In this document: one piece after another, positions 3,309 to 64,000 of the stretch | Layout of the letters: the number at the start of each line of letters is the position of its first letter | Position numbering within the stretch: position 1 is the first letter of the stretch | Source: Amphiscolops sp. MND2022 | Taxonomy: Eukaryota | NCBI GenBank assembly: GCA_964187785.1 | Contig: CAXLNC010000052.1 | Span: 62,001 to 126,000, forward strand | DNA: 64,000 nucleotides | Reading direction: 5' to 3' | Translations under genes and position numbers: made by a program | The notes under the pieces: model-generated | Databases searched by the model: none | Told to the model about the DNA's origin: nothing | What the model saw: the letters and a program-made list of their open reading frames with translations, nothing else

Positions 3309-3381
3309 GCTCCTGTGGCCTAATGGATAAGGCGCCTCCCTCCTAAAGGGGAGTTTGCGGGTTCGAGTCTCGCCAGGAGTA
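3309..3381 (+). tRNA. tRNA-Arg (anticodon CCT)
   Basis: Cloverleaf: acceptor GCTCCTG/CAGGAGT, D-arm GCCT-AATGGATA-AGGC, anticodon loop CT-CCT-AA, T-arm GCGGG-TTCGAGT-CTCGC. The anticodon stem CCTCC/AGGGG has one C-A mismatch and one T-G pair. Confidence 0.9.
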
Positions 3382-15554: not shown

Positions 15555-15586
<32 letters not shown>

Positions 15587-21120: not shown

Positions 21121-21679
21121 CAAGTTCTTACCTGGGGGTGGCTCGGAGGTGGCCTTCGAGCGGTCCCGCTCAGACAGGGAATCGGACAGGCAGTTTTAAA
21201 ACCAAACATGCTCTTTAGAATCCAAATGAACCTTGCATTTAAATGGCTCAGAAAACATGAGATGAACCTTGCGTTTCAAAGGATCATGTGGTCCGACTGA
21301 TCTAAATTGCAACCTTTTAAAAGGAAGCAGANNNNNNNNNNNNNNNNNNNNNNNNNNNNNNNNNNNNNNNNNNNNNNNNNNNNNNNNNNNNNNNNNNNNN
21401 NNNNNNNNNNNNNNNNNNNNNNNNNNNNNNNNNNNNNNNNNNNNNNNNNNNNNNNNNNNNNNNNNNNNNNNNNNNNNNNNNNNNNNNNNNNNNNNNNNNN
21501 NNNNNNNNNNNNNNNNNNNNNNNNNNNNNNNNNNNNNNNNNNNNNNNNNNNNNNNNNNNNNNNNNNNNNNNNNNNNNNNNNNNNNNNNNNNNNNNNNNNN
21601 NNNNNNNNNNNNNNNNNNNNGCTGCTCAGACTCGTGCATTTTTGATGGAGCCTGCGCGCACACACACGCACATCACTTG

Positions 21680-23037
21680 TCAGTCAAGACGGCAATTCAA
21701 AGTTTCTTTGCGGTGGCGGCGAATCTGGTACGTGTGCGGGAAGAAGCGCAACTGGTTAAGCTCGAAATTGGCATGGTCAAGGTCAGCTTTCAGCTTCTTG
21801 TTGGCTTTCTCTAACTTGGCAATCTTAGTGGCGAGTTCGAGTGGACTGGCGTACTCCACTCGACGCGCCTTTCCCCGCTCGACTCGCTTCATGACACCGG
21901 TGCGCTCCAGCAGCCTGACCTCATCTCTCAAGGCAGCCTTCCGCTTGTGCAAACACGTTGGGCACCTTGCTGCTCGCTTGCCCACGGCCTTCCCGCAATC
22001 TTGGCATTGCCCCAACCTTGAAGTGCTGACTTGCGCTTTATTGCAAGCTGCAGCCTCACAATCCTTGTTGCAACAGTAACCACGACCGCGTCCATGCAGG
22101 GCCTCTCCGCATCCATCGCACACACGTCTGGTGCTGATCCTTGCAGCACATGGGTCTCGCACGCACTTCTGTGGCTTCGGCAATGGCTTGCTCTGCCACC
22201 GCTTAATCTCTCGAGAGACCACAGTCTTGAGGCGGCTTGGGCGGACTGCTGGAAACTCGGCCCTGATAGTGCTGAGGATGGTTTTCTCGTTCCATCCTTC
22301 GTCATAACCGAGAATCTCTTGGATCCTCAAAGTATAGTCTGCAAAGACTGGCGGCTCCTCAGTGTTTGCAGCCAAATCAGGATCAGACCTGACATCGTCG
22401 TTGTCAGCTCGAGAGACAGCGGCCTCTTGGTGTCGCCTCTCTATAGCCGCTGGCATTTCGTCTTCACCTGCGAGAGTGGGTGTATCTTAGGGGGGGACAT
22501 GATCATTTGTGCGCTTTCTCATTGAAAGTCGATAAGATTTTCATAAGTCTTCCTCGGGTCACCTGCGGACACCGCTGAGTCTGAGCCCTTTGCTCGCACT
22601 CGCTGGACAAGGAGATCGTAGTGGTTCACTCCATTGTAGAGAAGATGTATGCAATGAGCATCCTCAGAAACGCTAGGATGCGTTGCTTGATACTTACGCT
22701 GTAGCTTCGTGTCATGGACAATGACTTGCCTGTTGGTCATCTTGGAGAACGCCACTATTACCATGTGGCCACCATACTTCTCTGGGTCTGCAGCGAGCTT
22801 ACTAGCTTCTTCTGACCACAAGCGCCCATCATCACCTTCGAGTGGTGCTTGATCCAACAGGTATTCAATGATAGCAGCACGCAGAGAAGCTGCCTGGCCA
22901 ACTGTGGGAACGGCTTCTGAGAGAGCATGGAAAAGGCATAGTCCATCGCCTGGCACGCGGAGAGTATCCATGTGGCCTGGCACTTCTGCTTCAGGTTCTG
23001 CCATCCGAGCGTCAACCCTGGACGAAATTTGGGACAT
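21680..23037 (-). CDS. Spliced gene: N-terminal OTU-like cysteine protease, then CxxC zinc-finger/ribbon motifs and a coiled coil. Exons 23037-22563 and 22467-21680; may continue into the N run.
   Basis: OTU catalytic motifs VPGDGLCLFHAL (D-x-x-C) and HLLYNGVNHYDLL (His). A 95-nt GT-AG intron (22468-22562, phase 1) joins ...SAVSA-G-EDEMPAA in frame. Downstream motifs are CDGC, CCNKDC, CQDC..CPTC and LATKIAKLEKANKKLKADL. Confidence 0.8.
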
Positions 23038-23527
23038 GTCAACAACTGCAACTGCAAGGAGGGGTGGGAGGTGCTTGAGCTAAGGGGCTGCGGCTGTCTC
23101 TAGAGTGGACTGATACATAGGAGAGATCTTCGCGTGTGCCGAGCCAAGGGAACATCAGCTCCACCATGAAGAAGGGAAGGCTGAACACCACACACACACA
23201 ACTGCACAGGAACGGATATGTGCAGCACATGCGCTCACAATCTGCAGCAGATAGATGTGTGAAGGGTCTACAAATGGGAGGGATGACAAAACTGAAGGAG
23301 GGCGATGTCTACGCACACCGAATCTCCACAAGGAAGAGCTTCTTTCCCACTGACTCTTGAGAGGTTGGTGGTCAGACTGATCACACAGGCACAGGCTCTT
23401 CACAATGCAATGAATCCTAAGCATGCCGACGCGAAGTACATTAAGACGAACTCTTATCAGACACACCTGCCCTTCAGAATAGAGCTACTACATCGCGCTG
23501 GTCCCCATAAACAAGCCACCTCAGTAT

Positions 23528-26500
23528 ATGTCAAAACGGTGGAAAACAGACCCCGAAAACAAACAGACCCCCAAAACACAAGTTCAGCAAACGAGCTTCA
23601 CCAGCAATCTCCCGAAAACATTTTCTTGCGATGGTGTGGTTCAACCTCAACATGGCTAATGTAAATTTAATCTTGCACGTTTTGTCGCTGCTCAAGGATA
23701 GCTACATGTGCATGTACATGCATATATACTATAAGTAAAGTCTCTATGTATATGAAGATACGTATATTACATATAGTATTTTTATACACATATCGCTTGA
23801 TTGGGATGTGTGTGTGTGGGGCGTCCAGAAATGCAGCCGCCCACTTCCCAAGACAGATGCATCCAAAAGGTAAGGTGCACAGTGTGTGAGGGCCAATTTC
23901 TCAGAACTTTGCCTCACATCCAAGAATGATTCTTTATAAAGGGAGGGGGGGGGTTATGGTTTTTTTTGCTCCAAGTGTCTTGAATTGTTTATAAGAAATC
24001 ACCCCAGAAACAAACACATTACAACTGCCAAGTACAATGCGTTTCTGTCCTTATTCTTGNNNNNNNNNNNNNNNNNNNNNNNNNNNNNNNNNNNNNNNNN
24101 NNNNNNNNNNNNNNNNNNNNNNNNNNNNNNNNNNNNNNNNNNNNNNNNNNNNNNNNNNNNNNNNNNNNNNNNNNNNNNNNNNNNNNNNNNNNNNNNNNNN
24201 NNNNNNNNNNCACCTTAGCAAAAGGAGGGGGGGGGGGTTAACAGTAGGGTCTCGGGCACAAAACCAAAACGGCGTGCCTGATCCCTACGGGTAGCCACCC
24301 CGCCCCCCCCCCGAGAGAATGAAAATGAAGATGAGGCGATGAATTGCACAAAAAGGAAAAAAGGAACAAAAAAGGAGACAAGGAGTAGAAAGGAGAAAAT
24401 AAAGAGAGAGGGCAACAAAAAAAGGAGGCCTAAAAAGAGATATAGAGAGAGAAGGAGAGAATGAACAGAAGGAAAAAAAGAGAAACAAAGGAACTTTTTC
24501 CTACAAATTAACGAAAAGTTAAACAACCAAACATTTTTCTCTGTAAGAGGTTTTTTCTTGATGCTCATGTTTTCAAATCGCGCGATTGGAGTTCTGAGGT
24601 TTTTTTTTTAATGTTTGCATGTGTTCTTTTCAGAACCATCTCGTCCGGTATCGTCTTCCCTCCGCGCAAGAGCGACTTGGTCAAGGCCCCCCCTTAAGAA
24701 CTCTTCTGCAATAAGAACCATGACCGGTTTTCTCCGCACTTTTGGACGAGCGATTTCATTTGAAAAACCATTTTTTATGAAATATTTCTCGAAAACGAGC
24801 TTTTCTTTGAAAAATCCTTTTTTTTAAATGCTAGTTTTTTGTTTTTAAACTTTTTTGGGGGGACACTATTTTTTAGTTTTCGATTTTTTGGTAACAAAAT
24901 ATTTGACATTTTTGAAATATTTAAACTAGTTTTGAACAATATTTGAGAAATATTTTTTGAAAACTAATGTTCTGAAAAAAACAGAATAACAGGTCATGTT
25001 TCTTAGTGTAGGAGGGTTCTTAAGGGCGACCTGCATCATATCGATCTATCATAATCATCCCATTTTTAAGATAAAGTTGGTGGCCCCCTCACTCCGATCA
25101 GGGGGAGGGGGACGAAAATCCCAGCCCTTCAACAGGGATGTCCGGAAATCGGGGGCGCAGGATGATGGAGGATGAGAGGGGGGGGGGTCTGGGGGAGGGG
25201 TCTAGGTAGCAGAGCCAGAGGGAAGAACCTCAGCCTGCTTACGCAGCCCAACGCTACCCCCCTCCTTCCAAGGGCCATGTTTACCATCCGCCCTCACATC
25301 GGAGGGGGGGGGCACACCTTGAGGGGAGGGGGGTAGGCGCGTGAAACAGGTACAATGTGGCAAATTGGCGTTCTAACCTGGAAACCGTGCACATTTTGGC
25401 CATTTTGAGGGGTTTCTTAGGTCTCTAGCTACAACCACTCGGAAACCCTGTTTATGCTATAAATTCCAATAGAAAACCACTTTCTGGAGGCATCAAGACA
25501 AGTAGAAAGAATGTGTCACTTTACGTCCAAACCCTTCGAAAGTCTCTCCTTATTTTTGTAGTGCCAAAACGCCGAGAATGACCGATTTTGGGCCAAAAAA
25601 GTGCACGGTTTCCCTGCCAGAACGCCAATTTGCCACATTGTACCTATTTCACGCATATACGGGGAGGGGGGTAGAGTTGCGGTAGCGGTAGGGAGCGGCA
25701 AGCTTGCCGCGTTCTCCGCCTACCTTTTTATGGTGGAGCCCGGCAAGCAATACAGGTGGGGTGGGGGTGCTATTGGGGGTTTTTGCCTGCCCCCGCCCCG
25801 CCTCTCAAGAGCGAGAAGGTGGGGGAGGGGACAGGGAAGATCGTCGTAAGGCTTCCTTCTACCCCCCCTTCCCCTGGTGCCGCCCCGAAGAAAAAGGCGC
25901 CAGGGGAAGGGCGGTGGAGGGGGGGGGGTAATCAGTTCCCAATACCAAACTCGCCCTTACCTCCCTGTTCCCATTTTTGGCACTGACCTAAGCCCTAAAC
26001 GGTCAGTGCCTGGACGGGAGTGGGCAGGAGTCCCCATATGACTGACAAAAATACGACTCCAAACAAACAAGCTTAGGACACTTGATTTCATATTTAATGA
26101 TCTGAGGCAAAAGGTCTTGCGATCAGCGGGGTGCAGATGCAGACTGAATACAAGAACATTAGAGAATACCCTTCTGTCCATTGATTTATGATTTGGGCAA
26201 ACCCTCCCAGCAATCAGCTTTCTGATGAAGACAAAATCACAAGAGTCAATGTGTCAGGGAATTGTTTTCAAAATATCAACTTTTCCACATGCCGAAACTC
26301 AGTGAAACCAACAAAGGTTTCTGAACTAAATTGAAACGCTCTGGCAAAAGATGCGGTATGGAACCTCCATCGGAATCGATCAATTGATCTTATTTTTTTA
26401 GTGGAAAGGCTCTGGCAAAAGATGCGGTATGGAACCTCCATCGGAATCGATCAATCGATCTCATTTTTTGTGGTCACCACTTGTATCTGTAACTCTCATT

Positions 26501-26620
26501 CTCCTTGTTCGTGGGCCTTAGTTTGGGAGTTGGAAAAACGAACGGTTCGAACCTGCATTTGTCGTTCCAAACAACTTGTCAGACACATGCTTGTTTGCAT
26601 ATATTGTTTGGAGACAGAAG
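23528..26620. mobile_element. Left arm of the foldback element carried in duplication copy 2
   Basis: Same terminus and same CAGTAT flank as 8298, so it was copied with the duplication rather than inserted independently. Confidence 0.85.
25337..25660. mobile_element. MITE with 36-bp TIRs, present only in duplication copy 2
   Basis: GCGTGAAACAGGTACAATGTGGCAAATTGGCGTTCT (25339) and its near-perfect inverse ending at 25654. Flanked by the direct repeat GGGGAGGGGGGTAG, which is single in copy 1 (~10117). Confidence 0.9.
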
Positions 26621-26820
26621 NNNNNNNNNNNNNNNNNNNNNNNNNNNNNNNNNNNNNNNNNNNNNNNNNNNNNNNNNNNNNNNNNNNNNNNNNNNNNNNN
26701 NNNNNNNNNNNNNNNNNNNNNNNNNNNNNNNNNNNNNNNNNNNNNNNNNNNNNNNNNNNNNNNNNNNNNNNNNNNNNNNNNNNNNNNNNNNNNNNNNNNN
26801 NNNNNNNNNNNNNNNNNNNN

Positions 26821-46167: not shown

Positions 46168-47418
46168 CAGCAGGATGCTCCTCAGAATGAATCAGATGTT
46201 CCCACCCGCCTCACTTGCATTTCTTCTCAGGAGAAAGCAAGAACGCCCCACTCCCCCTATTCTTGGCCAAAAGACACGTTGGAGGGGGATTCCGAAGAGG
46301 CGGGGTGTATATTTTGAAACTCTCCGCGCCAGAATTTTTATACCCTCCCCCTTCTTTTATATAGCCCCCTCCCGCAGAAGGGCATTCTCAGGGGTGGGGG
46401 GTGGGGGCGCCTAACATCTGGCCCCCCATTTTCTTCGATTCTTGCCAATTGTCCTACCATTTTCTGTGGAGTATATGCTGGCTTCTTGCCGAATCTCGAT
46501 ATTTGGACAAAGAGGTCTTTCTCCATCGAGGCGCCTTCCTTGCAAGCATCGGGAGCCCTGACTCTCGAGGCTCGCATGATACCCTTTCAGACCTCAGGAA
46601 AACGCCCTTTTGAGGCTTCAAAACAACTCCCCTTTTGCATTGTAACGACTTTTCATGTTATCCAGGGATTCACTTCAAATAGGGAATGCCCAACACCCCA
46701 CACCCCAGGAGTCATGTGTTGGGAGCAGGTCTGCATGCTTCTTCTTGCCCGAACGGCCGAACCCTGAAAAGGTCTCTTGCCGCCGAAAGTGCGACAAGAA
46801 GAAGACAATCTTTGGACTTGTGGGTCGTTTTGGGGCTGCAGACCCTGGGAGACTTCTTCATATCTTACAAGATATCAGGCAAGGCCTGAGAGCTTCAAGA
46901 TATGTTTTAAAGTCGTATCTTGCAATAGTGGNNNNNNNNNNNNNNNNNNNNNNNNNNNNNNNNNNNNNNNNNNNNNNNNNNNNNNNNNNNNNNNNNNNNN
47001 NNNNNNNNNNNNNNNNNNNNNNNNNNNNNNNNNNNNNNNNNNNNNNNNNNNNNNNNNNNNNNNNNNNNNNNNNNNNNNNNNNNNNNNNNNNNNNNNNNNN
47101 NNNNNNNNNNNNNNNNNNNNNNNNNNNNNNNGGCTTACATCATACTCTTCTTGGAGAGTGTTCAAAAGGCAAGTGGCCAAGTCAGATCAATCTAAGCATG
47201 GCCCGGATGCTGTATGATTAGTTGTGCCTGCTCGCCTCGTGACCTGCCTAGCCAAGCGGCTTAGGTCAAAGTTGTCTGAGATGTGCTCATGCATGTTTCG
47301 AGTGTCTGTCAGAAGTGGTTCGTGGAAAATTACCATCCTGTCAAGTGCCGGTTCGGGCGCTGTGCCGATTTTGATCTTCTCGAGCTTTTCTTTTGGTGCT
47401 GGTTTCGGTGTTGGGGTC

Positions 47419-50131: not shown

Positions 50132-50715
50132 TAGTTTTCCGAAAGGATTTTTGGCTACAAAAGGCCTGGGCAATAACACACCTAACAGTGGACTCGCTCA
50201 TAAGATATTCAGCCAAATCATATTGCGATTGTTGGAGGGAGGGCAGTGTATTTTAATTGGCCCGAGATGGAAGCTCAAACTTGTGTTAACAACAAGCACG
50301 TGTTCTCTGTTTGAACATGTTGGCCATGCTGAGTGGATTGACTATTGGAAACACGATAAGGTATGACCTAGCCAAACAACACCTGAAACATCATCGCGAA
50401 CACTGCAAGAACAAATGCACTACCATTCACCCCGAATTTTTTACAAATTAATTCCCCTCCCGGTTTTTTGGGGTAATTTTTTGTGATTTTTACGGGAATT
50501 CGTTGCGGCACCGATTTTTTTTGTAACTCCCATGCGCTCCTCGCCGTCCTCGGGGAGTCGCGTGGATATTGCACAAAAACCAAACAAGAGTGGCCAGATT
50601 CTGGATCAACGCTGGAAAATATTTTTGTAATTTTTACGAAATTAGTTCCTCGCAAGATTTTTTTTTTATATTGCAAAAATGTTGGTGTTGATGGTAGATG
50701 TTTTCGCTGCATAAA

Positions 50716-50862
50716 CTTAGTGGCACGGGCGATTCGCAACGCGATTCGCGCGAATCGATTCGCGCGAATCATTCGCAATTGAAACCCCTATTTTTATAGT
50801 GCCTCAGGCCGATTCGCATGAATCACGCGAATCACCCGATTCGTGCGAATCACGCCACTAAG
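50716..50862. mobile_element. hAT-like MITE, 8-bp TSD
   Basis: CTTAGTGGC..GCCACTAAG; perfect TSD TGCATAAA; interior with CGATTCGC/GCGAATC repeats. Confidence 0.92.
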
Positions 50863-51009
50863 TGCATAAACATCTGAGTTTCAAACTTGTTAAGTGATTC
50901 GCAAAGGAAGAAGCCCGGAGCGGCGCCCAAAGAATTGGACACGTTTTTGGCTCTGCGGAGGCTCTTGCGTGATCTTCTGAGTCTTGTAGGGCAAGCAAAA
51001 CAATCTTAA

Positions 51010-51219
51010 CAGTGTGCAAACTAGGTGCAGACTGTAGAGACAAGTGGATTTACAAGGGGCGTTTGTAGAAATCAGTGATTTTATTGAAATTTAAAGGTTC
51101 TCTTTTGGAATTCCTAGAGAACAAGCGCTCCTGAGAAAATCAAAAAGCCCCCAGAAAATCACCGGAAAAGTGGAATTTTCTGAGCCTCACCTTTGGCAAT
51201 GCACCTAGTTTGCAAACTG
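51010..51219. mobile_element. MITE with ~20-bp TIR and possible TTAA-type TSD
   Basis: TTAA|CAGTGTGCAAACTAGGTGCA ... TGCACCTAGTTTGCAAACTG|TTGA. Confidence 0.7.
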
Positions 51220-52825
51220 TTGACAATCACTCGTTGCGACTCGAGCGACCATTTACAGGGCCCTCCGGGCCCGAAATCCCAAAAAAACGTCTCAAAAAGA
51301 GTCTTTATGGGGGTCTGCGAGAAAGTCCCCGAAAACACCCGAAAAACTTCAATTTTGGGTATTTTTCGACTTTTCCGGGCATTTTCGGGGACTTTTTTGC
51401 ACACCCCCAAGCCCTGATCTTCTTTTCCTTGTTTTTTTGAAATTCCTTGCCGTTTTGGCCCCAAAAAACAAGGATTTTTTCAGAAAGTGTGGGTTTTAAG
51501 ACATTTTTAGACTATTTAGCAAGGAATTAAGCCCAAAAAAGGAAGGAATCCTGCTATTTTCCCCAAAACAGCAAGGATTTCCATTAAAAAAAGGCAAGGA
51601 TTTTTATGCAAGGAATTGCCCAAAAAAGCAAGGAAAAAAAAAGCAAGGAATTTTGAGAGTTTTGCCTCCAAAATTGATTGCAGCTGGGAGTGTGTGCATG
51701 CAAGGGCCATGCTCTCTCCCTGAGACTGTCTGTGCTTCCTCCCTGCATCTAGCTCCTTCTACTTAACTGGATCTGGGATCTGATCTTATATTTGAGTCTG
51801 GAATGCCTCTGTTCCTCACCTAACCTGCAAATGTGATACATGCCATGCTGGGTCTGTTGAGCCTCTGGGTTTCTGCCAAGCCTCCCTGCAGCTGCAGGAA
51901 ACTGATGGCCTCTTAGCTATTTGTCTTAAATGCACCTCTCAAATAATTTCAGTGTCCTATCAAAAATTGTGTCGCCAAGCTCCTAAAGAGCACTTAATTG
52001 AGCACCTGCATGCATGCTAGATCGACAATGCCTATCCTGAGATGGAAGATGATGAAGTGTGCACTTGTTCATCTTGTTGCTTGCACATGCATTTGTCTGA
52101 GTTGTGAACACCTATATTGGGCCAAGGGCCCAGGATGGAGGTGCTTGCAGTGTGCATTTTTTGTGCACAATGTGCATGTTTTTGAGCAATGCCTCCCCTC
52201 AACTACATATTATTCATGATGGCCATGCATGCATACAAGGTACCTCATGTTGATGTTGCCATTTTCAGAAGTGCTTAGGCTTAGTTGCCTGCCCTAGCTG
52301 GCACTTTGAGTGTCCTGCAGGTGGGCACATCTGGCATGCAAATCACATCCAACCCCATCACCCCTAGCTGTCCAAAATGTCAGTTGAATTGGGTGTCTCT
52401 GACAGTCTGGGTTGGGAGAAGTATATAGGAGAAGTAAAAGAACACATCTATATATATATATATAACCCAAAGGTTGGAGCTTGGAGATATTCTTGCCATC
52501 CCTGAGGGAGCTTGAGGCCTGCAACAAACCAGACAAGCAACATCAAAAAAACCCTGGAAGACAAATCATATCACAACCAATTCCTCAAACTTTTCTGCAA
52601 GATTTTGGATAACTTGCATGGTGGTGATTCCTACTTGCTTGTGTGCCCTATCTTGCTGAACACTGAATGCCAAAACATGCCACAACCAATTCCCATGATT
52701 TCTGCAAGAGGGCCTGGGGTTCCAAAAACCTTGTTTGGAGCACTCTTGTCTGGGTTGTGCCTTTGAGATTGGTGGTGATTCCTACTTGCTTGTGAGCCCT
52801 ATCTTGTTGGCAGAGCTTGGTGGGT

Positions 52826-53600
52826 GTCACTCCAAGGCCTACTAGCTTGCATTGGGTGGCATTGTTGCAGCCAAGGCCTACTAGCTTGCATTGGGTGGTT
52901 GCATTGCAAAGGCCTACTAGCTTGCATTGGGTGGTGGCATTGCAAAGGCCTACTAGCTTCTTGCCAAGGCCTACTAGCTTCTTGCAAAGGCCTACTAGCT
53001 TCTTGCAAAGGCCTACTAGCTTCTTGCAAAGGCCTACTAGCTTCTTGCAAAGGCCCTACAGCTCATCAAGGCATTGGTGAGAGTCCTAGCTATCCCTCAT
53101 CAATACATTGGTGAGAGCCCTACAGCTCATCAAGAGAGTGGTGAGAGCCCTGAACCTCATCAAGACATTGGTGAGAGCCCTGAACCTCATCAAGACATTG
53201 GTGAGAGCCCTGAACCTGAACCTCATCAAGACATTGGTGAGAGCCCTGAACCTCATCAAGACATTGGTGAGAGCCCTGAACCTCATCAAGACATTGGTGA
53301 GAGCCCTGAACCTCATCAAGACATTGGTGAGAACCCTACTTGTGCCAATTCTACCTCATCAAGTTCCTGTGTGTGGTGTTGCAGAGCAAGTCTACCTCAT
53401 CAAGTCCTTTGTGTGTGTGGTGTGCTAGCAGCTCTACCTCATCAAGTCCTTATTGTGTGTGGTGTTGCAGAGCAGCTCTACCTCATCAAGTCCTTTGTGT
53501 GTGGTGTTGCAGAGCTCTACCTCATCAAGTTGTTTGTGTGAGTGGTGTTGCAGAGCAGCTCTACCTCATCAAGTTGTGTGTGTTGCAGGAGCCCTACAAG
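52826..53600. repeat. Compound minisatellite (33-, 21-, 30- and ~40-bp units)
   Basis: AAGGCCTACTAGCTTGCATTGGG.., AAGGCCTACTAGCTTCTTGCA x5, CCTCATCAAGACATTGGTGAGAGCCCTGAA x~8, TCTACCTCATCAAGT..GTGTGTGGTGTTGCAGAGC x~6. Confidence 0.95.
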
Positions 53601-53815
53601 CAAAGTCTTTGTTGCTGTGGCTTGTGGTGAAGTGCCCCATTAAGTGAAGAGACAAGAGCTAGCAAGAGTCCTAAATTGAGAAGCAAGTAGTTCCCTGATC
53701 CTAGATGTTCTGGCAGCTGGGGCCTGAGATCATGGGGTACAGAATGGTTTTGCCAAAATTGTGGTGTATATATGTATATATACATATATATATATGTGAG
53801 TCCTTGCTTGCAGGT

Positions 53816-55534
53816 ATGCCTCCCAAAGATGGATATCATTGTCAAGCTCTGCAAGTTTTTCAACAACATGGTAAAACAATTGAGAGGCTTGGTTGGAAGC
53901 ACATGGACCCAGAGGAGTTTGCCACATGCTTCCTTCAGATGCTCAAAGGCTTGGGACAGATATCAGACAGGGTGAGAAAAAGTGAGTTGAAAGTGATAGT
54001 CCAGGATGGCAAATTCAGATTGTCCTCCTCTGAAATCCATTTGTTTGCAGAGAAGGTGGCATCAACAATCAAATTCTGCAAGCAAAAACTTCGAGACAGT
54101 GGATCAGGCAAGTTTCTACCTGCACCATGTGTTGCATTGAGGAAAATCTGGTCCAGAACCAGGATTGGGAAGACCTACATGAAGGGCAAGGCAAAGGGAC
54201 AGAAGCAGCAGAGCAGCCCCAAAAAGAAGGATGAAAAGGCTATTGGCATCAGAGATGTGTTTGGCCTTCCTCCAAAAAGAAAGTCTGAGCTGGTCAGGTT
54301 GGATTCCACTTCCTCATCTGAGGATTTTCAGCCAGCAACAAGAGTTTCTTCTTCAAGCTCTGCCCCTTCTGCACCTTCAAGTGGTTCTTGGGAGACCTGT
54401 CCAAAACCTCTGGGCCCAAACCAACACCCCAAATACCCACCATGAGAGAAAGAGCTCTAGCCATCTGAAAAATGGGGCCAGCAACTCAGCAAGGATATTG
54501 CTATTAAAGCCTTGTCTTGCAAGAACTCAATATCCCCATATGACCTAGGTTCAAAGGATGGACAAGCAAAGCTCATCTACTATGACATCTTCAATCTTCG
54601 AGCAGTTTGCAAAGGGCCTTTAGGGGAGCTTACCTTCCCTTTGTGTGAGATGCCTGGCAAGCAGAACTTGGTTTGGAAAAATGTTGAGGGAGACATTGTT
54701 GAAAGCCAGGTACCAAAGAAGTATCTCCAAGCAGTGATGAAAAGGCCAGCAGCACTGGCACCTCCCCAACAAAGAGGCAGCTAACAAAGAAGCAAAGGCA
54801 GCAAAGAAAGAAGCAGATCCAGAAGAAGAAGAGGAAAGTCAAGAGGAGGAGGAGGAGGCAGGTGAAGAACCTCAAGATGGGGATGCTGAGGATGATGAAG
54901 GCATGCTAGAAGAAGGTGAAGAGGAGGAAATGTTAGAAGATGAGGAGGAAGAAGCAGAAGAGCAAGAATGTGAAGCTGAGATAAAGAAGAAGAGGAGCAT
55001 GTGATTGGAGATGGAAAGGTGAGTGAGTCAGAGAAGAGAGAGGTGGAGGATGAAAAAGCAGAAAAGCAAGAAACAAAGGAGGAGATGAAGGATCAAAAGG
55101 CAGAGACTCAAGAGAAAGATGAGATGAAAGGTGAGAAGGCAGAGAGTGAAGAGCAAGATGAAAAGGAGCTCAAGAAGATGAAGAAGCCCTTGGTCATGAA
55201 GCCCTTGGTCATGAGAAAGCCAACATCATCCTCATCATCAGCATCATCATGGAAGCTGGTTGGCAAGAAGGCTGATCCTAACCCTGTCATTGATGGTGCC
55301 TACTATGTGAATGCAAAGAGTGGCAAGAACATCAGGGCTTACATATTGGCTCGCTATGGATCTGAGAAGACACAACTGGTGCAGATATCATCTCATGAAG
55401 CCTTGGCCTACAAGGCAATCACCAAGCAGATCCATGAAGAGGCCTTGGAGAAGATAGCATCAGGGGTGAGGTTGCAGGAGCTGAAGGCATGGGCAGCAAG
55501 CACAAAGCAAGCCCTCACAAGGTGGGCCATGTAG
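53816..55534 (+). pseudogene. Disrupted ~550-aa hypothetical protein: basic N-terminal domain, MKRPAA motif, long acidic tract, small C-terminal domain
   Basis: ATG at 53816 follows a CAG acceptor. ORFs 53705-54445 and 54512-54784 are in the same frame, separated by TGA and TAG (premature stops or a small intron). Frameshifts near 54770 and 54985 link to 55001-55534. Confidence 0.6.
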
Positions 55535-55711
55535 AGCAAATGCCATGGAATCCCTGTGCACACCTCATCTGATCCCCCAAGAAGTTCTAAACCCCATGAA
55601 AGCTCTAGAAAAGCCACTCATGGACACAAAGTAAGCTTGCATTTTTTGACCTTAATTGAGTGCTGGCATTGAGGGTTTAGGGGCCCTACATATCTCACTG
55701 ACTCTTTCATA

Positions 55712-55830
55712 TCTCCCTGCAGGTGAGTGAGTGCATGAATGAGAAGTACCCAGACAAGTTGCAGAGATGTTCTTTGTTCAGGACAAGGGCATTGATGCCT
55801 CCAAATCAACATGTGTGGAAGGCCATGAGT
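55712..55830 (+). pseudogene. Remnant of exon 2 of the 60664-61913 gene
   Basis: CAG|GTGAGTGAGTGCATGAATGAGAAGTACCCAGACAAGTTGCAGAG..TTTGTTCAGGACAAGGG..TTGATGCCTCCAAATCAACA matches 61181-61350 with deletions. Confidence 0.85.
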
Positions 55831-56284
55831 TGAGCCCATTGTTTTGGGAATAGACAAAACATCACCCATGTATATGCCAACTTGTTTGCTGGAGGCTTCT
55901 GACATTTTGCCAATCATAGCCACAAGAAACAACTCTGAACCCCATGGGATTGACTCAATGGCCCAGGGGCACATGGATCATGAACAACCAAGATTGCACA
56001 AAAACATGGTCGAACATGCAATGCAATACCTAAACATGAGTATGTATCTATCAAATAAATGTATTGACTAAGCAGGATGTTTGGGGCCTTTTTGACTTGT
56101 AAAGTTCTTGTTCCCTCCATTCTGCTTTTTGTTTTAGCAGATGACTACACAAGTTTGGAAAACATTGTTCCATTTTCATGTGATCATTGTTTGGCTTGAT
56201 GTCTTTTGAAGCATTGCATTGGTTCTCTTGAAGTGTGCACTTGGATTTTGAATGGTTTGGGCCTAGTGATGCTATGTCCAAACA

Positions 56285-56450
56285 ATGCATGGGGCCTCTT
56301 TCTTGGAAGCCTACATGCATGGGTGCTTATTCCTTGGATGCATGGGTCTTCTTCTTGGAAGCCTACATGCATGGGTGCTTATTCCTTGGGAGATGCATGG
56401 GTCTTGTTGGAAGCCTACATGCATGGATGCTCCCTTGGGAGATGCATGGG
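56285..56450. repeat. 3' minisatellite GGAAGCCTACATGCATGGGTGCTTATTCCTTGG, cassette 1
   Basis: About three units, homologous to 62200-62420. Confidence 0.9.
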
Positions 56451-56999
56451 TGTTTTTGTCCTAGCAGAGCACTCCAAGCTGTGCATGTAACACACTCATA
56501 CCTAAGGTTCAGACCATTTATCACAGATTGTTGATACCTAAGGTTCAGATCATTTATCTCAGACTGCTGTGAATTGCCAGATGGCTATAATCTGGCAATG
56601 AAAGGTCCTAATTTGGCATTGCAAGAAGGGCAAAAACAATAGATGCTTGTGTTAGAGTTGTCATCTTTTCATGGGGATTTGTTTCAGGAATGGTTGGGGC
56701 ATTTGTAGAGAAAAGTAAGAGTCTTGTATCTCTTCTAAAATTAACATCCCTTCTATGAGCTCAAGCTGGACAACACCCTGCAACAAAGTTGTGCTTGCAG
56801 AGTTGCTTGGGAGCCACTCCTTGAGGCCTTGCACAGTGAAGGACATTGAGCCCAAGCCTTGTGTTTATGTGGGTTTCTTTTTTGATCCACACTGAAGCCA
56901 CCCTTACAACCATAAGTAGTTTTTAGCCACCTTTTGAGCCACAATGGGTAGTTTTGGCCACCTCTGCAAGGCACTTCTGCAAGGCTTGAGCCATGCCCT

Positions 57000-57360
57000 T
57001 TGAGGCACATTGGGTAGCTTTTAGCCACATGCAATGGGCACAGCCTCCTTTGGAAGGCCAGCCCTTGAGCCACACATGCTAGCTTTTAGCCACAAGGCTT
57101 GCCCTTGAGCCAATCATGCTAGCTTTTAGCCACAAGGCTTGCCCTTGAGCCAATCATGCTAGCTTTTAGCCACAGCCTCTTGTGAAAGGCTTGCCTAGCC
57201 ACATAACATTGAGCCCCTTCATTAGCTTGCAGCCACCTTTGCTAGCTTTTAGCCACATAGCTTTTAAGAACAACTACAATGATTGCCTTTGATCCAGACA
57301 TTCTAGCTCTTAACCACATTGGTTTCAACATAGTTTTTAGCCACCTAGCTTTTAGCCTCT
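57000..57360. repeat. Degenerate TAGCTTTTAGCCAC repeat cluster
   Basis: The motif recurs about six times, including a 40-bp tandem duplication at 57075-57155. Confidence 0.85.
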
Positions 57361-60139
57361 TTTTGTCAGGGTCAACCCCTTGAGCCATACCACCTCATAT
57401 GTTGAAGCTAGCATTGGGCCAAGGCAAGCCTTCTCTTGAGATTGGGCACCTACTTGGTTCATATCATGGAGGATTGCATGAAGGAGTGGATGAGACACAC
57501 ACACATGGTTCACTTGGCAACAAGTTATTGCCACAACATTTGTTGCTAAGCAGAATGGAGTTTGGGGCATGTTAAAGATTGGTGCACATGCTTTTCTTAA
57601 ATTTTTATTCAAACATGAGTGTACACATATGAAGGGCAACATGGACACATACAAGAACACATGCATCATGATTAATACATGAGGCAAATCATGCACTAGA
57701 AATTGCACATTATTGAGGAGCATATTTATGCTAATCAACAACATGTATCCTAGTTCTATAAGTAGAGATGGGGGGACACAAGTTCTAATGAAAACTCATA
57801 TTGCACAATTGAAAATATAGACCTACAGGCCTTCATTGGCAAGGCAATGCATACATTTGGAAGAGCAGCTGGCTGGGATGCTTGTAGATGGCATGCATGT
57901 GAGTAGGTACATATATATATGTATATACATGTACATATATTGATATTATGAAATCATCTTATTGGCAAAGCAGATGTGACATAACATGTCAGTGACATAA
58001 CAGAAGTAGAAGCTATATGTAAGAGGCATCCCTGGCCAAGTTGCCACCAGCACTCTGCACTTTGATGATCTTGCAGCATTGTTGGATGAAAAAGTGTAAG
58101 CTTGCTTGCAGAAATTCACACCAAGCAAGAAGAGTGCCCCAAATCACACCACCCCTGTGAATCTATGGAACCCATGCTACCCTCAAACCCCACCCCTGCC
58201 AATGTCTGGACCCAACCTTGGTCTCAGAGATGTTGGGTGAGACAAGCTCCTGCACAGAAACCTATTTGCCAGCATTGGGCACATGTGGAGGAGATTGCTG
58301 TGGCTAGGGCTGTCAAGATATTCTTGCCAAATTGCCTAGATTGCCTATCATGTGCAGGAGATTGCTGTGGCTAGGGCTGTCAAGATATTCTTGCCAAATT
58401 GCCTAGATTGCCTATCTGCCACAGATGTGGAGGAGATAGCTGTGGCTATGTCTGGTAATCATGTCTGTTTGTTCATGGTGTGAAGCCAAGAGGTGTTCTA
58501 GTGAAGCTGCCTAGATGCCTATCTGCAAGCATTGAGCACATGTGGAGGAGATCATTGTGGCCAAACATGGCCCATTGTAGTGTTGCTAAGATATGACAGC
58601 TGTTTGTTGTTGATGTGGAGGTGGTTGTTGTGGTGGATGTTGAGAAACACCATGGCTGTCTGCAACAATTGAGCACATGTATCTGGAGGTGATCATTGTG
58701 GCCAAACATGGCTCATTGCATTGTTGCTTAAAATATGACAGCTGTTTGTTGTTGATGTGGAGGTGGTTGTTGTGCTGGTTGATGTTGAGAAACACCATGA
58801 AATTGTTGTGGCTGTTTGTGGTTGAATGTGATTGCTGGCTTTCAATCAAGCTACCTAAGGAATGCAGACTTCACAACCAAAGACAGGCACACACACAACA
58901 AGCCAGACACCACCATAAAATTACCAACTCTACATGTGTGCACAATCCACTAATCCAGTGAGCTGGCCACCTCTTGTTTGCACATTGGACCCAACCATGA
59001 CCAACACCATCCACAACTGAGTCAGCCTATGATTGGCACAAACCACTCCCCAATCCATGTGCACATTGTTGCAAGTGATGGCTTCCTGGTGTGCTGTCCA
59101 AAATCTGCCCCAAGCTGTGCTCAAAAATGTTAAAAAAAACATTTTTTTAACAGATCATGTTTTCAAAAATACACTATAAAACAAGTGCTTTGGGCCAAGT
59201 TAAAAGCAAGAAAAAATGTTAAAAAATATCATTTTTGAACACCTATTTTGTGCATTTATCCTATTTTTGTAGTGAATTTCAGTGCTCAAAAAAAAACTAT
59301 TTTTGAACAAGCCCAAAATCATTTTTGAGCACATTTTTGAACACTCCAAGGCATGTCACCACTATTTTCAAAGCACATGATCATATTTGAAGCTCATTGT
59401 TAAAGTTTTGGTTTTGTGCTCAAAAATGCTCAAAAATGCTCAAAAATGCTCAAACATGGGAATACATGGCAAATTGTGCCAATTGTGTGCTTGGTATAGA
59501 GATGTGTGCACTTGTCATCATCTTACATGCAAGTCTGTGTGTGAGTTTGCCTCACAGTTGTATCCTATATTTGGTCAAGGGTCCAGAATGGAGGTGCTTG
59601 CATTGCTTGTAAGCAAGACATGTGCAAACATGCATACCTCAAATGTCTTTCTGGAGGAGTGAAGGAAAGAATGTGAAGTGTTTGAGGATGCTTACATCAT
59701 TGCACTTGTGGCCATTTAGACAAGTTGAACTCAGTTGTGTTAGGCTCTGTGGCATCACAATTGAGTTGCCATCTCAGGTTGGCACACACCCCCATCCACA
59801 CATCCTCCTTCACCCTCCCAATGGAAACAAGCAGAGAGAAATCAAAGTGGTGGGTCTCAACTACTTGGGTCTAGGTGTGGCAGAGCTTGAGTGTGTGATA
59901 TGTTGCCCCAGAGGTTTGAGCTTGGAGCTTCTGTGCCATCCCTAAGGGAGCTTGAGGCCTGCAACAAATCAGACAATGAACATGCTGATAAACACACCTC
60001 AATTTCAAGATCAGTTGGCTTTACAAAATTGCTAAGCCCAAATTTGATGATTCAAAATTGTTGGTTTTCCTCCTAAGCCCAAAGTTGATGTTTGGTGTTG
60101 TCTGAGTTGTTGCTTCCAGATTGGTGGTTGCCCTTGTTG

Positions 60140-60663
60140 GTGACAATCTTGCAGAGCCCTACTGTGGTGCCAATTCTACCTCATCAAGTTCCTTGTTGTG
60201 GGTGTGAGTGGTGTTGCAGAGCCCTACTGTGGTGCCAATTCTACCTCATCATTGTTGTGGTGTGGTGTGGTGTTGCAGAGACCTACCTGTTGTGAATCCA
60301 AATCTACCTCATCAAGTTCCTTGGTGTGGTGTGGTGTTGCAGAGCCCTAGTGTGGTTCCAAGTCTACCTCATCAAGTTCCTTGGTGTGGTGTTGCAGAGC
60401 CCTAGTGTGGGTGAAAGTCTACCTCATCAAGTTCCTTGGTGTGGTGTTGCAAAGCCCTAGTGTGGTTCCAAGTCTACCTCATCAAGCTCCTTGCTGTGGT
60501 GTGGTGTTGCAGAGCCCTAGTGTGGTTCCAAGTCTACCTCATCAAGTTCCTTGCTGTGGTGTGGTGTTGCAGAGCCCTAGTGTGATTCCAAGTGTACCTC
60601 ATCAAGTTCCTTGGTGTGGTGTTGCTTAGCCCTACTTGTTGTGGTTCCCAGGTCTACCTCATC
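60140..60663. repeat. ~60-bp minisatellite running into the start codon of the next gene
   Basis: GTTGCAGAGCCCTAGTGTGGTTCCAAGTCTACCTCATCAAGTTCCTTGG x~8; the last unit reads CCCAGGTCTACCTCATC-ATG. Confidence 0.95.
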
Positions 60664-61913
60664 ATGGCCAAGACACCAAAGAAGAGCAAGACACATAGCC
60701 CAAAGAAGGCCAACAGCACCTTGCAGAAGCACTTCCAGAAGGCCACCCCACCCTCTGCAGCCAGCTCCTCTCAGGAACCTACCAGAGCCCAGACCAGCCT
60801 CTTCCTGACATATGTGAGGGCAACAGCAAAGGGAAAGGATGAGAGAGCAGCAGAGCAGGCCATGGAGCTTTCAAAGCACTACATGGAGCTCACAGTGCCA
60901 GAGAAGAAGGCATTGATCCAAGAATTTTTTAAAGTTGGAGGCCGCAAACAAGGTTTAAGCCTTTGCTTTGCCCAAGCCATTCACACAAAGCAGGCAGCTA
61001 GTGAGGGCACTTGGAGTGGATATGTGACACCAGGAGCTCTCATGGTGTTGGAGGGGGTGCCCTGGGATGTTTCAAAAATGTCCCCAACCATAACAAGGCT
61101 CTGAAAACCACAAGTCTCTCAATGTCTGGGGTTCCAAAATAGCCAGAGTTTCCAAAGTGTGGGGGATGCATCTGCCCTTGACAGGTGAAGGAGACTGACT
61201 TTGAGAGCTTTGATGAGATGTCTGATTGGTATCACAGGACATGTGATGAGTGCATGAATGAGAAGTACCCAGACAAACCCAATGCAAACTTCAAGTTGCA
61301 GAAGAGGTACTTTGTTCAGGACAAGGGGGTTGATGCCTCCAAATCAACAGAGCTGTGTGAAAGGCTTGAGAGGACCTCTGGAGATGCTGGGGCTGCATTG
61401 GGTTGCTTGGGCTTGGGTGATGCTCCAAAGAAAGGTAAGAGTGTGAGTGATCAGCATCGATTGGCATACACAAAGCTACAACAATCTATTTCAAAGCTTG
61501 GAAGGTCATTGGGCATCTGTGAGCAGACAATGCCTGCCCAGAAAAGGCAGATGACTCCAATGGCATTCCAGAAGTACAAGCAGGGCTTCCACTCATGCAG
61601 AGATTGCAGGGATCAAGCACTTGATGAGGCAGAGGACTTGAAAGACCCTGAGGAGGGGGAGATGTTGGATTGCATGGATAAGATCACAAAGTTGCAAGCA
61701 AAGGTCAGTGAGCACTTGGATTGCTTGCTGGAAGCCATGCAGAACCATGCCCCAAAGAAGATGAAGAAGGAGGATAAGAAGGATGAGAAGAAGCCTGCTC
61801 AATCTAGCCAAGGACCCCATCACAAACAAAAAAGCAATCAACACCCAGACAAACAAACAACCACCCTGGGGGACATGAAAATCTCTCTTGCATGGGCAAA
61901 ACATCTTCTCTGA
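60664..61913 (+). CDS. Two-exon hypothetical protein, ~373 aa, with a helical/coiled-coil C-terminus (exons 60664-61056 and 61185-61913)
   Basis: MAKTPKKSK start. A phase-0 GT-AG intron (61057-61184; GGG|GTGCCC..TTGACAG|GTG) joins ..MVLEG-VKETDFES. Both exons are fully open; no family recognised. Confidence 0.7.
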
Positions 61914-62199
61914 GTTGTGTTTTATAGTTTTACTGTCTTTTGGCTTGGGAGACAGATGTATACCCTAGCCCTGTGCATGCAACCCTCAGGAGCACTCATG
62001 GATGGTGATGGAGCTGCCACTGGCTGATAGCAAAGTTGAGGAGGCCACTCTGGAACATGACCCTCCCCCAAAGAATGGGAAACTTGTTCTTGCTTTTGAC
62101 AATGTGCCTTGCCAAAATGCCTATTCAGACATTCAAGAAATGAGGTAGTGGTTGTGTTCTGGTTTGGTGCCCTTTTTTGGAGGACTTGGTGCTTGGATG

Positions 62200-62420
62200 A
62201 CAAGGCTACATGGGTGCTTATTCCTTGGCAAGCTGTGGGTGCTTAGTCTTGGTGGAAGCCTACAAGCATGGGTGCTTATTATTGGCAGGCTGTGGGTGCT
62301 TATGCCTATGGAAGCCTACATGCTTGGGTGCTTATTCCTTGGCAGGCTGTGGGTGCTTATGCCTATGGAAGCCTACATGCTTGGGTGCTTATTCCAGCTG
62401 TGGGTGCTTATTCCTTGGGA
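62200..62420. repeat. 3' minisatellite GGAAGCCTACATGCTTGGGTGCTTATTCCTTGG, cassette 2
   Basis: About four units, homologous to 56285-56450. Confidence 0.9.
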
Positions 62421-63014
62421 GCCAACATGGATGTCTTGCCTGACCAAGCCATGATGTTTAAGGTTGGCACTGCATTGAGTTAGCTAGGTGTGCTGTCCTC
62501 ATGTTCTTAAAACATCACACTAAGCTATAAACAAACATGTCAATCATAGATTGGCACATGTGTTCAGGCTTGGTCCTGGTTTGCTTGCATTGCACACACC
62601 TCTTTGCATGGGCCAACTTGAAGGCCCCTTTGGGCAAGATGCACTTGCTGTGGTTTGGGCATGATGACCACATGTATCAAAGAAGCAAGAGCAATAAGAA
62701 ACACTAAGAGCACACACTACAAATGTGAATATGGAGAGGGGGATGAGCACCTCAAACAATAGGCTGCACACAACCTAAACTTCTGACATGACCATGGCAA
62801 TGCAAGTATAAGCCAAGTTGTGCTGAGTTGGAGCTACATGATTGCAAGCTACAGCTTGACATGCTGCTTGAGCCTGGCAATGGAGAAAAAGAGTGGCTTC
62901 TCAGAGGATTCAGAAACATGGGCAGAGAAGAGAGAGATATAAAAATATGAAGAGATGAAGAGAGATAAATTGAGCAGAAAGAATGGGAGGGAGGTGGTAG
63001 AGAGAGAGATAGAA

Positions 63015-63075
63015 ATTCATAGATTGATAGATTGATAGATTGATAGATTGATGAATTGATAGATTGATGGATTTA
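63015..63075. repeat. (GATAGATT)n simple repeat
   Basis: Directly visible. Confidence 0.9.
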
Positions 63076-64000
63076 TTGATTTATTGAAAGATAGATGTAT
63101 ATATATATATAGAGATAGCTAGATAACCAGAAAGATAGATAGAAGATAGAAGAAGGTGACAAGAGTCACTAGATACAACAAAATGAGAGAGAGAGAGAAT
63201 GACAAACATAGAGCCACACTGAATAAATGAGATGCAAGGATGTGTGAGAAAGAGGGAAGATACAAAATAAAACAATGATATTCACACCCTCCCCCCCCAT
63301 CCAAAGATACTTGTATTTGGTGTATCTATAAATTTTTGTTGGAGGGAGACACATATACATAGATCAAGCCAGAGGAGGGATGGAGGGAGAGAGATAGAGA
63401 TAGAGAGAGTTGGGGATAAGCACCTAGAGATGGATAGACAAAAGGCAACATGATGAATTTGGAGGTTTGCATTGGAGAAGCCATGTGAAATGCACCCCCC
63501 CCCCCCAAACAAAAAATAAGACAGAATCTTCATGAGCCACCAAAACCCTGAACATCCAATGGATTGGCATGGGATTTCCTTGCAAATTCCATGGGCCCAA
63601 ACCCAATTTGCCATATTTCCCAACCACAATTCAGACATTGTTTTTTTTCACTTTGTCATTTGGGCATTTGGGGCTATGTGCTGTTTTTCATGTCCATGGT
63701 GTTGCATCAATGTTTGGTGGGGGGGGATGGGTGGGTTGGGGCAAAAGAGGTTTCTGCCCAATGCAATGTTTGGACCTGGCCTTTTGTTGTATTGAAATAT
63801 TGTTATGCCTTTTCTTTGGCATTGGATTCTTGGGGGGCAATGGGGGGGCTGCAATTTTTGGGTTTTTTTCTTTGGCAGTTTTCTTTTGGGGTAATGGGGT
63901 CTTTGGGGGTCAGGGGGCTGAGTTTTTTGGGAGGTAAGAGGGGTTGCCAGAGGTTGGGGTTCTTGGGGAGTGGTGGTGGATGTTGGTCCATGGAGGGGTT

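What the first reader, a model, noticed from the sequence alone, without database searches (positions are those of the whole stretch)
52050..62420. Two diverged cassettes with shared 5' and 3' modules but different cargo genes
Seen: 52050-52545 aligns with 59490-59985 (e.g. CCTATATT.GG.CAAGGG.CCAG.ATGGAGGTGCTTGCA and GCCATCCCT.AGGGAGCTTGAGGCCTGCAACAAA.CAGACAA). Each is followed by a TCTACCTCATCAAG minisatellite, then a gene, then a GGAAGCCTACATGC..GGGTGCTTATTCCTTGG minisatellite. Cassette 1 carries the acidic MKRPAA protein plus a remnant of cassette 2's gene; cassette 2 carries the 373-aa gene. Inference: a modular expression cassette in which cargo is swapped between conserved flanks, possibly by recombination in the minisatellites.
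Basis: partly seen in the sequence, partly recalled or inferred. Interest (0 to 1): 0.7.

Follow-up and report, generated by a model that had tools for sequence, protein, structure and literature searches.

The report
Old tandem duplication, one gene replaced
Two neighbouring gene units in an unidentified eukaryote share short upstream islands and the same flanking minisatellites because they are an old tandem duplicate in which most of one copy's gene was replaced by unrelated genes; this is ordinary genome evolution, not a demonstrated cargo-swapping system, although it lies in a strikingly CpG-free stretch of DNA.

Summary
Six blocks lie in the same order and orientation in unit 1 (52066-56450) and unit 2 (59520-62433). 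They are three short upstream islands, a TCTACCTCATCAAG minisatellite, an 84-nt piece of unit 2's gene, and a 3' minisatellite. Sequence between the islands is barely alignable. Unit 2 holds an intact two-exon, 373-codon gene. Its exon 2 belongs to a large unnamed family of 119 clusters, with no Pfam match and a helical-bundle model. In unit 1, about 2.1 kb carrying two other ORFs (246 aa and an acidic 294-aa protein) replaces the first ~600 nt of that gene. The 5' junction lies at the end of the minisatellite. The 3' junction lies inside exon 2. Recurrent cargo exchange is not shown. No third copy was found, and the tool that could show other loci was closed. Both units lie in a domain (51452-64000) with 8 CpGs where about 440 would be expected. 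Four or five of these survivors are in-frame Arg codons. Interest is modest.

The parts
52066..52150 (+). Unit 1, upstream island A (contains CCTATATTGGG, which is TATA-like)
   Evidence: 82-90% identical to 59520-59605, z = 8 against shuffles
52466..52545 (+). Unit 1, upstream island B
   Evidence: 87-91% identical to 59907-59985, z = 15.5. The 34-mer occurs only twice in the window. No conserved reading frame; a 1-nt indel lies inside it.
52746..52776 (+). Unit 1, upstream island C
   Evidence: 84% identical to 60098-60128 and collinear with the other blocks
52834..53338 (+). Unit 1 only: compound minisatellite with 36-, 21- and 30-nt units
   Evidence: TRF. The 30-nt unit shares ACCTCATCAAG...TTGGTG..GAGCCCT with the main 5' array.
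53342..53596 (+). Unit 1, 5' minisatellite (TCTACCTCATCAAG, 42-44-nt units, 6 copies)
   Evidence: The unit equals unit 2's 55-60-nt unit minus about 14 nt.
53705..54445 (+). Foreign segment, ORF 1 (246 aa; likely start ATG 53816, giving 209 aa)
   Evidence: An identical ORF is on the same public ENA contig. It keeps an in-frame CGA at 54092 in a CpG-free domain. No Pfam or PHROG match.
54650..55534 (+). Foreign segment, acidic protein gene (294 aa in the independent assembly; the ORF may extend upstream to 54512). The window has two compensating 1-nt indels, near 54765 and 54980.
   Evidence: P0123 maps residue for residue in three pieces. Paralogue P0124 is 65% identical in the C-terminal domain.
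55728..55811 (+). Remnant of the duplicated gene (codons ~22-55 of exon 2), with a 19-nt deletion that shifts the frame
   Evidence: 80/84 identical to 61247-61349, z = 16.9
56285..56450 (+). Unit 1, 3' minisatellite (GGAAGCCTACATGC...GGGTGCTTATTCCTTGG)
59520..59605 (+). Unit 2, island A
59907..59985 (+). Unit 2, island B
60098..60128 (+). Unit 2, island C
60149..60666 (+). Unit 2, 5' minisatellite (55-60-nt units, about 8 copies). The last unit reads TCTACCTCATCATG and supplies the start codon.
60664..61056 (+). Unit 2 gene, exon 1 (131 codons, Lys-rich N-terminus)
   Evidence: ORF. Paralogue P0085 has the same exon 1, read-through intron and exon 2.
61057..61184 (+). Unit 2 gene, intron (GT...AG, acceptor cag|GTG)
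   Evidence: The frame is restored across it. Many family members begin exon 2 at the same V-x-E-T-x-F position.
61185..61913 (+). Unit 2 gene, exon 2 (242 codons plus stop)
   Evidence: Family of 119 clusters at E<=1e-3 and 97 at 1e-10. The AlphaFold model has mean pLDDT 79.5 and a three-helix bundle. No significant PDB or BFVD fold match.
62209..62433 (+). Unit 2, 3' minisatellite
51452..64000 (.). CpG-free domain that contains both units (it runs to the window end)
   Evidence: 8 CpG observed against 637 expected at o/e 1. CA and TG o/e are 1.53 and 1.57.

Best explanation
The two units are the diverged products of one old tandem (segmental) duplication. The duplicated unit ran from island A, through the 5' leader minisatellite and a two-exon gene, to the 3' minisatellite. 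The downstream copy kept the gene. In the upstream copy, the stretch from the start codon to about codon 21 of exon 2 (about 600 nt) was replaced by about 2.1 kb carrying two unrelated ORFs. An 84-nt frameshifted relic of exon 2 was left behind, followed by decayed sequence. The incoming genes now sit behind the duplicated upstream region. By inference, they use its regulatory elements (promoter or leader capture). Shown: the collinear homology, the junction positions, and the intactness and conservation of the genes. Inferred: the order of events, that islands A-C are regulatory, and that unequal exchange or replication slippage in this minisatellite-rich DNA produced the duplication and the 5' junction.
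For: Six blocks lie in the same order and orientation over 4.4 and 2.9 kb, and none occurs elsewhere in the window. The relic lies in the collinear position between the 5' and 3' arrays. Weak residual homology remains between the islands and between the relic and the 3' array (z = 3.3 and 4.2), and none outside the unit. In unit 2 the start codon is part of the last minisatellite unit (13/14 match), so the array grew out of that gene's own leader and belongs to it natively. The unit 1 arrays are variants of the same repeat unit. The unit 1 ORFs are unrelated to the unit 2 family (hhalign probability below 1%). They appear to be real genes: they are uninterrupted on an independent contig that also carries the unit 2 gene (P0125, P0123 and P0001, all on the 26381-nt contig). 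The acidic protein also has a 65%-identical paralogue, and rare CpGs survive at in-frame Arg codons.
Against: Only one locus could be examined, so direction and uniqueness are not proven. The relic (95% identical) and the islands (82-91%) are much more similar than the DNA between them (about 70%, close to random). Simple uniform divergence does not predict this. It needs purifying selection on the islands, or patchy gene conversion between the copies, and the relic's similarity in particular suggests conversion or a more recent loss. No insertion hallmarks (target-site duplication, terminal repeats, poly-A) mark the 2.1-kb segment, so the replacement mechanism is unknown.
Confidence: 0.6

Rival explanations
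1. This is the first reader's model: a true modular cassette system. Conserved 5' and 3' modules with minisatellites act as recombination substrates, and different genes are repeatedly exchanged between them.
For: Shared flanks with different genes. The 5' junction of the foreign segment coincides with the end of the 5' array. The islands are conserved above background at a preserved spacing of 314 versus 302 nt. The unit 2 gene belongs to a family of 119 clusters that could populate many such units.
Against: Only two units are seen. The 3' junction is inside exon 2, not in the 3' array. Unit 1 still carries a relic of the other cargo, as expected from a duplicate. No recombinase or integrase domain occurs in 100 ORFs of the window. 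The motif scan of metagenome contigs returned only three unrelated chance loci.
Confidence: 0.1
2. This is differential loss. The ancestral unit carried all three genes (ORF 1, acidic protein, 373-codon gene). After duplication, unit 2 deleted the first two genes and unit 1 lost most of the third.
For: It needs only deletions after duplication. The relic lies downstream of the acidic gene, as this order predicts.
Against: In unit 2 the start codon lies in register inside a minisatellite unit (13/14 match). A deletion joining array to gene would not be expected to produce this. No trace of the unit 1 ORFs exists in unit 2.
Confidence: 0.15
3. The shared modules are fragments of a dispersed repeat or mobile element that inserted independently next to two unrelated genes.
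For: The genome is rich in repeats and minisatellites.
Against: Independent insertion does not explain six blocks in identical order and orientation together with a relic of the neighbouring gene. No terminal inverted or long terminal repeats are shared by the units. No transposase or reverse-transcriptase domains were found.
Confidence: 0.05
4. This is an assembly artefact, a mis-joined or collapsed repeat region.
For: The window has two 1-nt indels relative to another assembly and contains scaffold gaps elsewhere.
Against: An independent contig of 26381 nt carries ORF 1, the acidic gene and the unit 2 exon 2 together, with one amino-acid difference. The two units are far too diverged to be allelic copies.
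Confidence: 0.03

Closest known systems
Tandem segmental duplication followed by gene disruption and promoter capture (chimeric or replaced paralogues)
   Same: Adjacent same-strand copies, collinear homology blocks, a pseudogenised relic of the original gene, and a new gene placed behind the duplicated upstream region.
   Different: The foreign 2.1 kb has no recognisable insertion signature. Similarity between the copies is unusually patchy: islands of 82-95% lie in near-random background.
Repeat-flanked gene cassettes used for gene conversion, such as trypanosome VSG genes with upstream 70-bp repeats and conserved 3' ends (recalled from general knowledge, not tested against sequences)
   Same: An upstream repeat array and a conserved downstream element bracket a variable gene.
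   Different: In that system the cargos are all members of one family and there are hundreds of copies. Here the two cargos are unrelated, only two units are seen, and one junction lies inside a coding exon.
Minisatellite-associated unequal exchange and replication slippage
   Same: The arrays differ in unit length (42-44 versus 55-60 nt) and copy number between the copies. Unit 1 has grown derivative arrays, and the 5' junction abuts an array.
   Different: No direct evidence that the arrays mediated either the duplication or the replacement.
CpG-depleted, historically methylated genome compartments (5mC deamination; CpG-directed hypermutation of repeats in some fungi)
   Same: CpG is almost absent, with matching excess of TpG and CpA and unchanged TpA. 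The survivors are concentrated at selected Arg codons.
   Different: The depletion is far more complete (o/e 0.01) than the roughly 0.2 typical of vertebrates. It covers intact, conserved genes and ends at a sharp boundary. Methylation itself was not measured.

Membership tests
Tandem segmental duplication | Collinear homology blocks in the same orientation at two adjacent loci | tested here: met
   Six blocks in the same order on the + strand, about 7.4 kb apart
Tandem segmental duplication | Homologous gene content, or relics of it, in both copies | tested here: met
   An 84-nt relic of exon 2 at 55728-55811, 80/84 identical
Tandem segmental duplication | Homology ends at definable unit boundaries | tested here: met
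   No alignability upstream of island A (z = 1.7) or after the 3' array (z = -0.1)
Recurrent cargo-exchange cassette (repeat-flanked, VSG-like or integron-like) | Three or more units with the same flanks and different cargos | tested here: inconclusive
   Only two units in the window. The metagenome scan gave chance hits only.
Recurrent cargo-exchange cassette (repeat-flanked, VSG-like or integron-like) | Exchange junctions lie in the flanking repeats on both sides | tested here: not met
   The 5' junction is at the array end (about 53600-53640), but the 3' junction is inside exon 2 (about 55720), 560 nt before the 3' array
Recurrent cargo-exchange cassette (repeat-flanked, VSG-like or integron-like) | A dedicated recombinase or integrase nearby (integron-type only) | tested here: not met
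   In the Pfam scan of 100 ORFs of at least 110 aa across the window, only two families passed E <= 0.001 and neither is a recombinase or integrase: a sub-cutoff OTU protease domain match (22.3 bits against a 23.3 cutoff) and a DUF1029 match that was not followed up
Transposable element or retrocopy insertion (for the 2.1-kb foreign segment) | Target-site duplication, terminal repeats or a poly-A tail at the segment ends | tested here: not met
   Only chance-level 12-mers at the ends, no terminal inverted or long terminal repeats, no A-run
Methylation-driven CpG decay domain | CpG loss with reciprocal TpG/CpA gain | tested here: met
   CG o/e 0.01. CA 1.53 and TG 1.57, against 1.17 and 1.16 upstream.
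Methylation-driven CpG decay domain | Cytosine methylation present on the DNA | not testable with these tools
   Needs bisulfite or native long-read data

The most novel reading that the evidence does not exclude
The two units could be the visible part of a genome-wide architecture. In it, the more than 100 diverged paralogues of the helical-bundle gene sit in minisatellite-bounded units inside nearly CpG-free (heavily methylated or hypermutated) compartments. The arrays and conserved islands would then serve as recombination and expression modules that let unrelated genes take over a unit.
Probability: 0.08. Interest if true: 0.6.

Novelty: new member of a known kind. Interest (0 to 1): 0.3.

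Why it matters
As it stands, this is a clear example of how a duplicated gene unit is recycled: one copy keeps the gene, and the other lends its upstream region to newcomers. That is textbook genome evolution. Two aspects deserve a specialist's attention. The first is the setting: a sharply bounded, almost CpG-free domain that still holds intact, conserved genes. The second is the large orphan gene family, which has no named relative. If the flanks proved to recur around different genes genome-wide, the locus would point to a eukaryotic gene-cassette mechanism.

Tried and rejected
- **Organism identity:** not achieved. Every protein relative is an unnamed ENA-only singleton. Pfam and PHROG scans of 100 long ORFs and of the cassette proteins gave only a sub-cutoff OTU match (22.3 bits against a 23.3 cutoff) and a DUF1029 match that was not followed up. 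No dinoflagellate spliced-leader relic was found. Rfam found only one tRNA.
- **Related loci:** The metagenome scan with two adjacent TCTACCTCATCAAG motifs returned three unrelated contigs with no BLAST similarity to the window. The search for related loci failed with the 49-sequence alignment. With the two-sequence alignment it found nothing in genome contigs or viral contigs.
- **Function of the unit 2 protein:** the model is a three-helix bundle, with no significant match in PDB or BFVD. The acidic protein has no PDB sequence relative.
- **Mobile-element reading of the units or of the 2.1-kb segment:** no shared terminal repeats or target-site duplications.
- **Islands as coding exons:** rejected. 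There is no conserved frame on either strand, and an indel lies inside island B.
- **CpG loss as a base-calling artefact:** rejected. ORFs stay open with Arg encoded by AGR, and the surviving CpGs are in-frame Arg codons.
- **Suppressor tRNA:** rejected. The loop reads as Arg-CCT.
- **Literature searches** for comparable CpG-free compartments gave nothing specific.
Full report
**Setting**

The window is eukaryotic. It has GT-AG introns and abundant minisatellites and microsatellites. GC is about 45% and TpA is depleted (o/e 0.52). The organism could not be named. All protein relatives found are unnamed singleton clusters from ENA assemblies, called as bare ORFs. A Pfam scan of 100 long ORFs gave only a sub-cutoff OTU protease match and an unexamined DUF1029 match. 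Nothing suggested human sequence. The N runs were left untouched.

**Check of the observation**

BLASTN at two stringencies and pattern searches confirm collinear, same-strand matches between the two units:

| Block | Unit 1 | Unit 2 | Similarity |
|---|---|---|---|
| Island A | 52066-52150 | 59520-59605 | core 88-90% |
| Island B | 52466-52545 | 59907-59985 | 87-91% |
| 5' TCTACCTCATCAAG array | 53342-53596 | 60149-60666 | shared motif |
| Fragment of unit 2's gene | 55728-55811 | 61247-61349 | 80/84, plus a 19-nt deletion |
| 3' array | 56285-56450 | 62209-62433 | shared motif |

The quoted motifs occur only at these two loci, with none in shuffled controls.

The claim that 52050-52545 aligns with 59490-59985 is too generous. 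Against shuffles, the islands score z = 8 and 15.5. The 310 nt between islands A and B scores z = 3.3. The B-C interval scores z = 2.0. The sequence upstream of island A scores z = 1.7, and the sequence after the 3' array scores z = -0.1. So the homologous unit runs from island A to the 3' array, with very uneven conservation.

**The genes**

Unit 2 has a two-exon gene:
- The ATG is at 60664, and exon 1 runs to 61056.
- A 128-nt GT-AG intron follows.
- Exon 2 is 61185-61913. The model totals 373 codons.

I searched the exons separately by reference. The word-based search with exon 2 found only a near-identical copy (P0001) and one relative at 55% identity. The exhaustive profile search found 119 clusters, 97 of them at E<=1e-10. 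Of the twelve clusters looked up, all are ENA-only and unnamed, and ten members scanned have no Pfam domain. One member (P0085) contains exon 1, a read-through intron and exon 2 in the same order. Many members start exon 2 at the same position, so the intron position is old. The AlphaFold model from a 49-sequence alignment has mean pLDDT 79.5. It shows a small N-terminal part and a long three-helix bundle, with no significant PDB or BFVD match.

Unit 1 carries two ORFs:
- ORF 53705-54445 is 246 aa, with a likely start at 53816.
- The acidic protein gene starts at ATG 54650. In the window it is split by a +1 indel near 54765 and a -1 indel near 54980. In an independent public contig (26381 nt) it is one 294-aa ORF whose residues match the window's three pieces exactly.

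That same contig also carries ORF 1 exactly and the unit 2 exon 2 with one amino-acid difference. This supports the assembly of the locus. The acidic protein has a paralogue that is 65% identical in its C-terminal domain. Neither unit 1 ORF is related to the unit 2 family.

**Junctions**

On the 5' side, homology with unit 2 fades within the last, degenerate array unit of unit 1 at about 53600-53640. This is just where unit 2 has its start codon. That ATG is part of a unit reading TCTACCTCATCATG. On the 3' side, homology resumes at about 55720, inside exon 2 at about codon 21. This is 560 nt before the 3' array.

So about 2.1 kb replaces about 600 nt: exon 1, the intron and the start of exon 2. 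No target-site duplication, terminal repeats or poly-A mark the segment. The unit 1 arrays are variants of the same repeat. Its 44-nt unit is unit 2's 60-nt unit minus about 14 nt, and its 30-nt array shares the core.

**Interpretation**

The simplest history is one tandem duplication of a unit made of upstream islands, a leader array, the gene and a 3' array. A replacement in the upstream copy followed. It left a relic and put two unrelated genes behind the duplicated upstream region.

The start codon lies in register within the array, so the array belongs natively to the 373-codon gene. This argues against an ancestral three-gene unit with differential loss. The 3' junction in a coding exon argues against exchange between the two arrays.

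The patchy conservation is not explained by uniform divergence: the islands and the relic are 82-95% identical, in a background near random. Two processes could account for it:
- Selection on regulatory islands. Island A contains a TATA-like motif, and the A-B spacing is preserved at 314 versus 302 nt.
- Patchy gene conversion between the copies. For the non-coding relic, conversion or a late loss is the likelier cause.

I could not separate these. Each array unit contains a TTGCAG acceptor-like site, and each of the three start codons is closely preceded by a pyrimidine-rich stretch ending in AG. This hints at leader introns or trans-splicing, but such a pattern is common by chance and I give it little weight.

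**What could not be done**

The key test is a census of other loci with these flanks, and it was not possible:
- The single metagenome scan returned only three unrelated contigs.
- Protein-guided scans of genome and viral contigs found nothing.

**Context seen in passing**

Both units lie in a domain with almost no CpG. Positions 1-51451 have CpG o/e 0.69. Positions 51452-64000 have 8 CpGs where about 440 would be expected at that ratio. CpA and TpG are raised to 1.53 and 1.57, and TpA is unchanged.

Four of the eight survivors are in-frame CGN Arg codons of the three genes. A fifth is an in-frame CGA just upstream of the acidic gene's ATG. The chance probability is about 1e-3 for four, or 8e-5 for five. 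Arg is otherwise AGR by 28 to 4. The OTU gene upstream of the boundary uses CGN 22 to 10.

This pattern indicates mutational loss of CpG, as expected from long-term cytosine methylation, with selection protecting a few sites. It also shows that the genes are real. A GCAAGGAAT-type motif occurs on both sides of the last CpG, so a chimeric join is not indicated. However, the public assembly places a 41.7-kb ORF on a different contig, so the junction is not independently verified.

**Verdict**

The cargo-swap reading reduces, on present evidence, to a duplication plus one replacement. The finding is of modest interest. The CpG-free domain and the orphan gene family are the more unusual features.

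Noticed in passing
window 51452-64000 (boundary near 51451): There is a sharp switch from CpG o/e 0.69 to 0.01: 8 CpGs in 12.5 kb. TpG and CpA show a matching excess. Half or more of the surviving CpGs are in-frame Arg codons of intact genes. This suggests a long-methylated or CpG-hypermutated compartment with a sharp edge next to a CpG-rich stretch (50500-51450, o/e 1.0-1.5).
   Followed up: partly
window 3866-11132 and 19123-26620; inverted partial copy 13839-16165: A direct duplication of about 7 kb at 94-99% identity, plus an inverted partial copy at 70-82%. Each direct copy carries a minus-strand gene with a sub-cutoff OTU-like protease match (22.3 bits against a 23.3 cutoff) and a Cys-rich coiled-coil part. 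A 393-aa ENA relative (P0003, 52% identical) has both parts as a single protein. The copy at 6.4-7.6 kb looks frameshifted.
   Followed up: partly
window 3309-3381 (+): ARAGORN calls this tRNA as anticodon CTA (labelled Pyl). Read by eye, the loop is CTCCTAA, that is Arg-CCT with a mismatch closing the anticodon stem. It is probably an ordinary or slightly damaged tRNA-Arg, not evidence of stop-codon reassignment.
   Followed up: partly
window ~54765 and ~54980: Two compensating 1-nt indels relative to an independent public contig break the acidic protein ORF in the window. One lies in a C run and the other in GAG(G)ATAAAG. They are probably consensus errors, or possibly a real allele.
   Followed up: yes
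window 1407-3026, 4143-6028, 11467-12053, 16281-17766, 19401-21263, 57054-57174, 58282-58799: Tandem arrays with units of 20-400 nt are very frequent across the whole window. Minisatellites next to genes are therefore a general property of this genome, not something special to the two units.
   Followed up: partly
window 51159-51464: Overlapping ORFs on both strands and a hairpin-like stretch lie directly at the CpG boundary. The stretch has weak, sub-threshold miRNA-model hits at 51308-51409. The region is rich in CCGAAAA-type motifs.
   Followed up: no
window 6097-6385, 8832-9004, 21332-21620, 24060-24210, 26621-26820, 46932-47131: These are N runs. The first four fall at matching positions of the two copies of the 7-kb duplication, and the last two are exactly 200 nt. 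They were left as they are.
   Followed up: no
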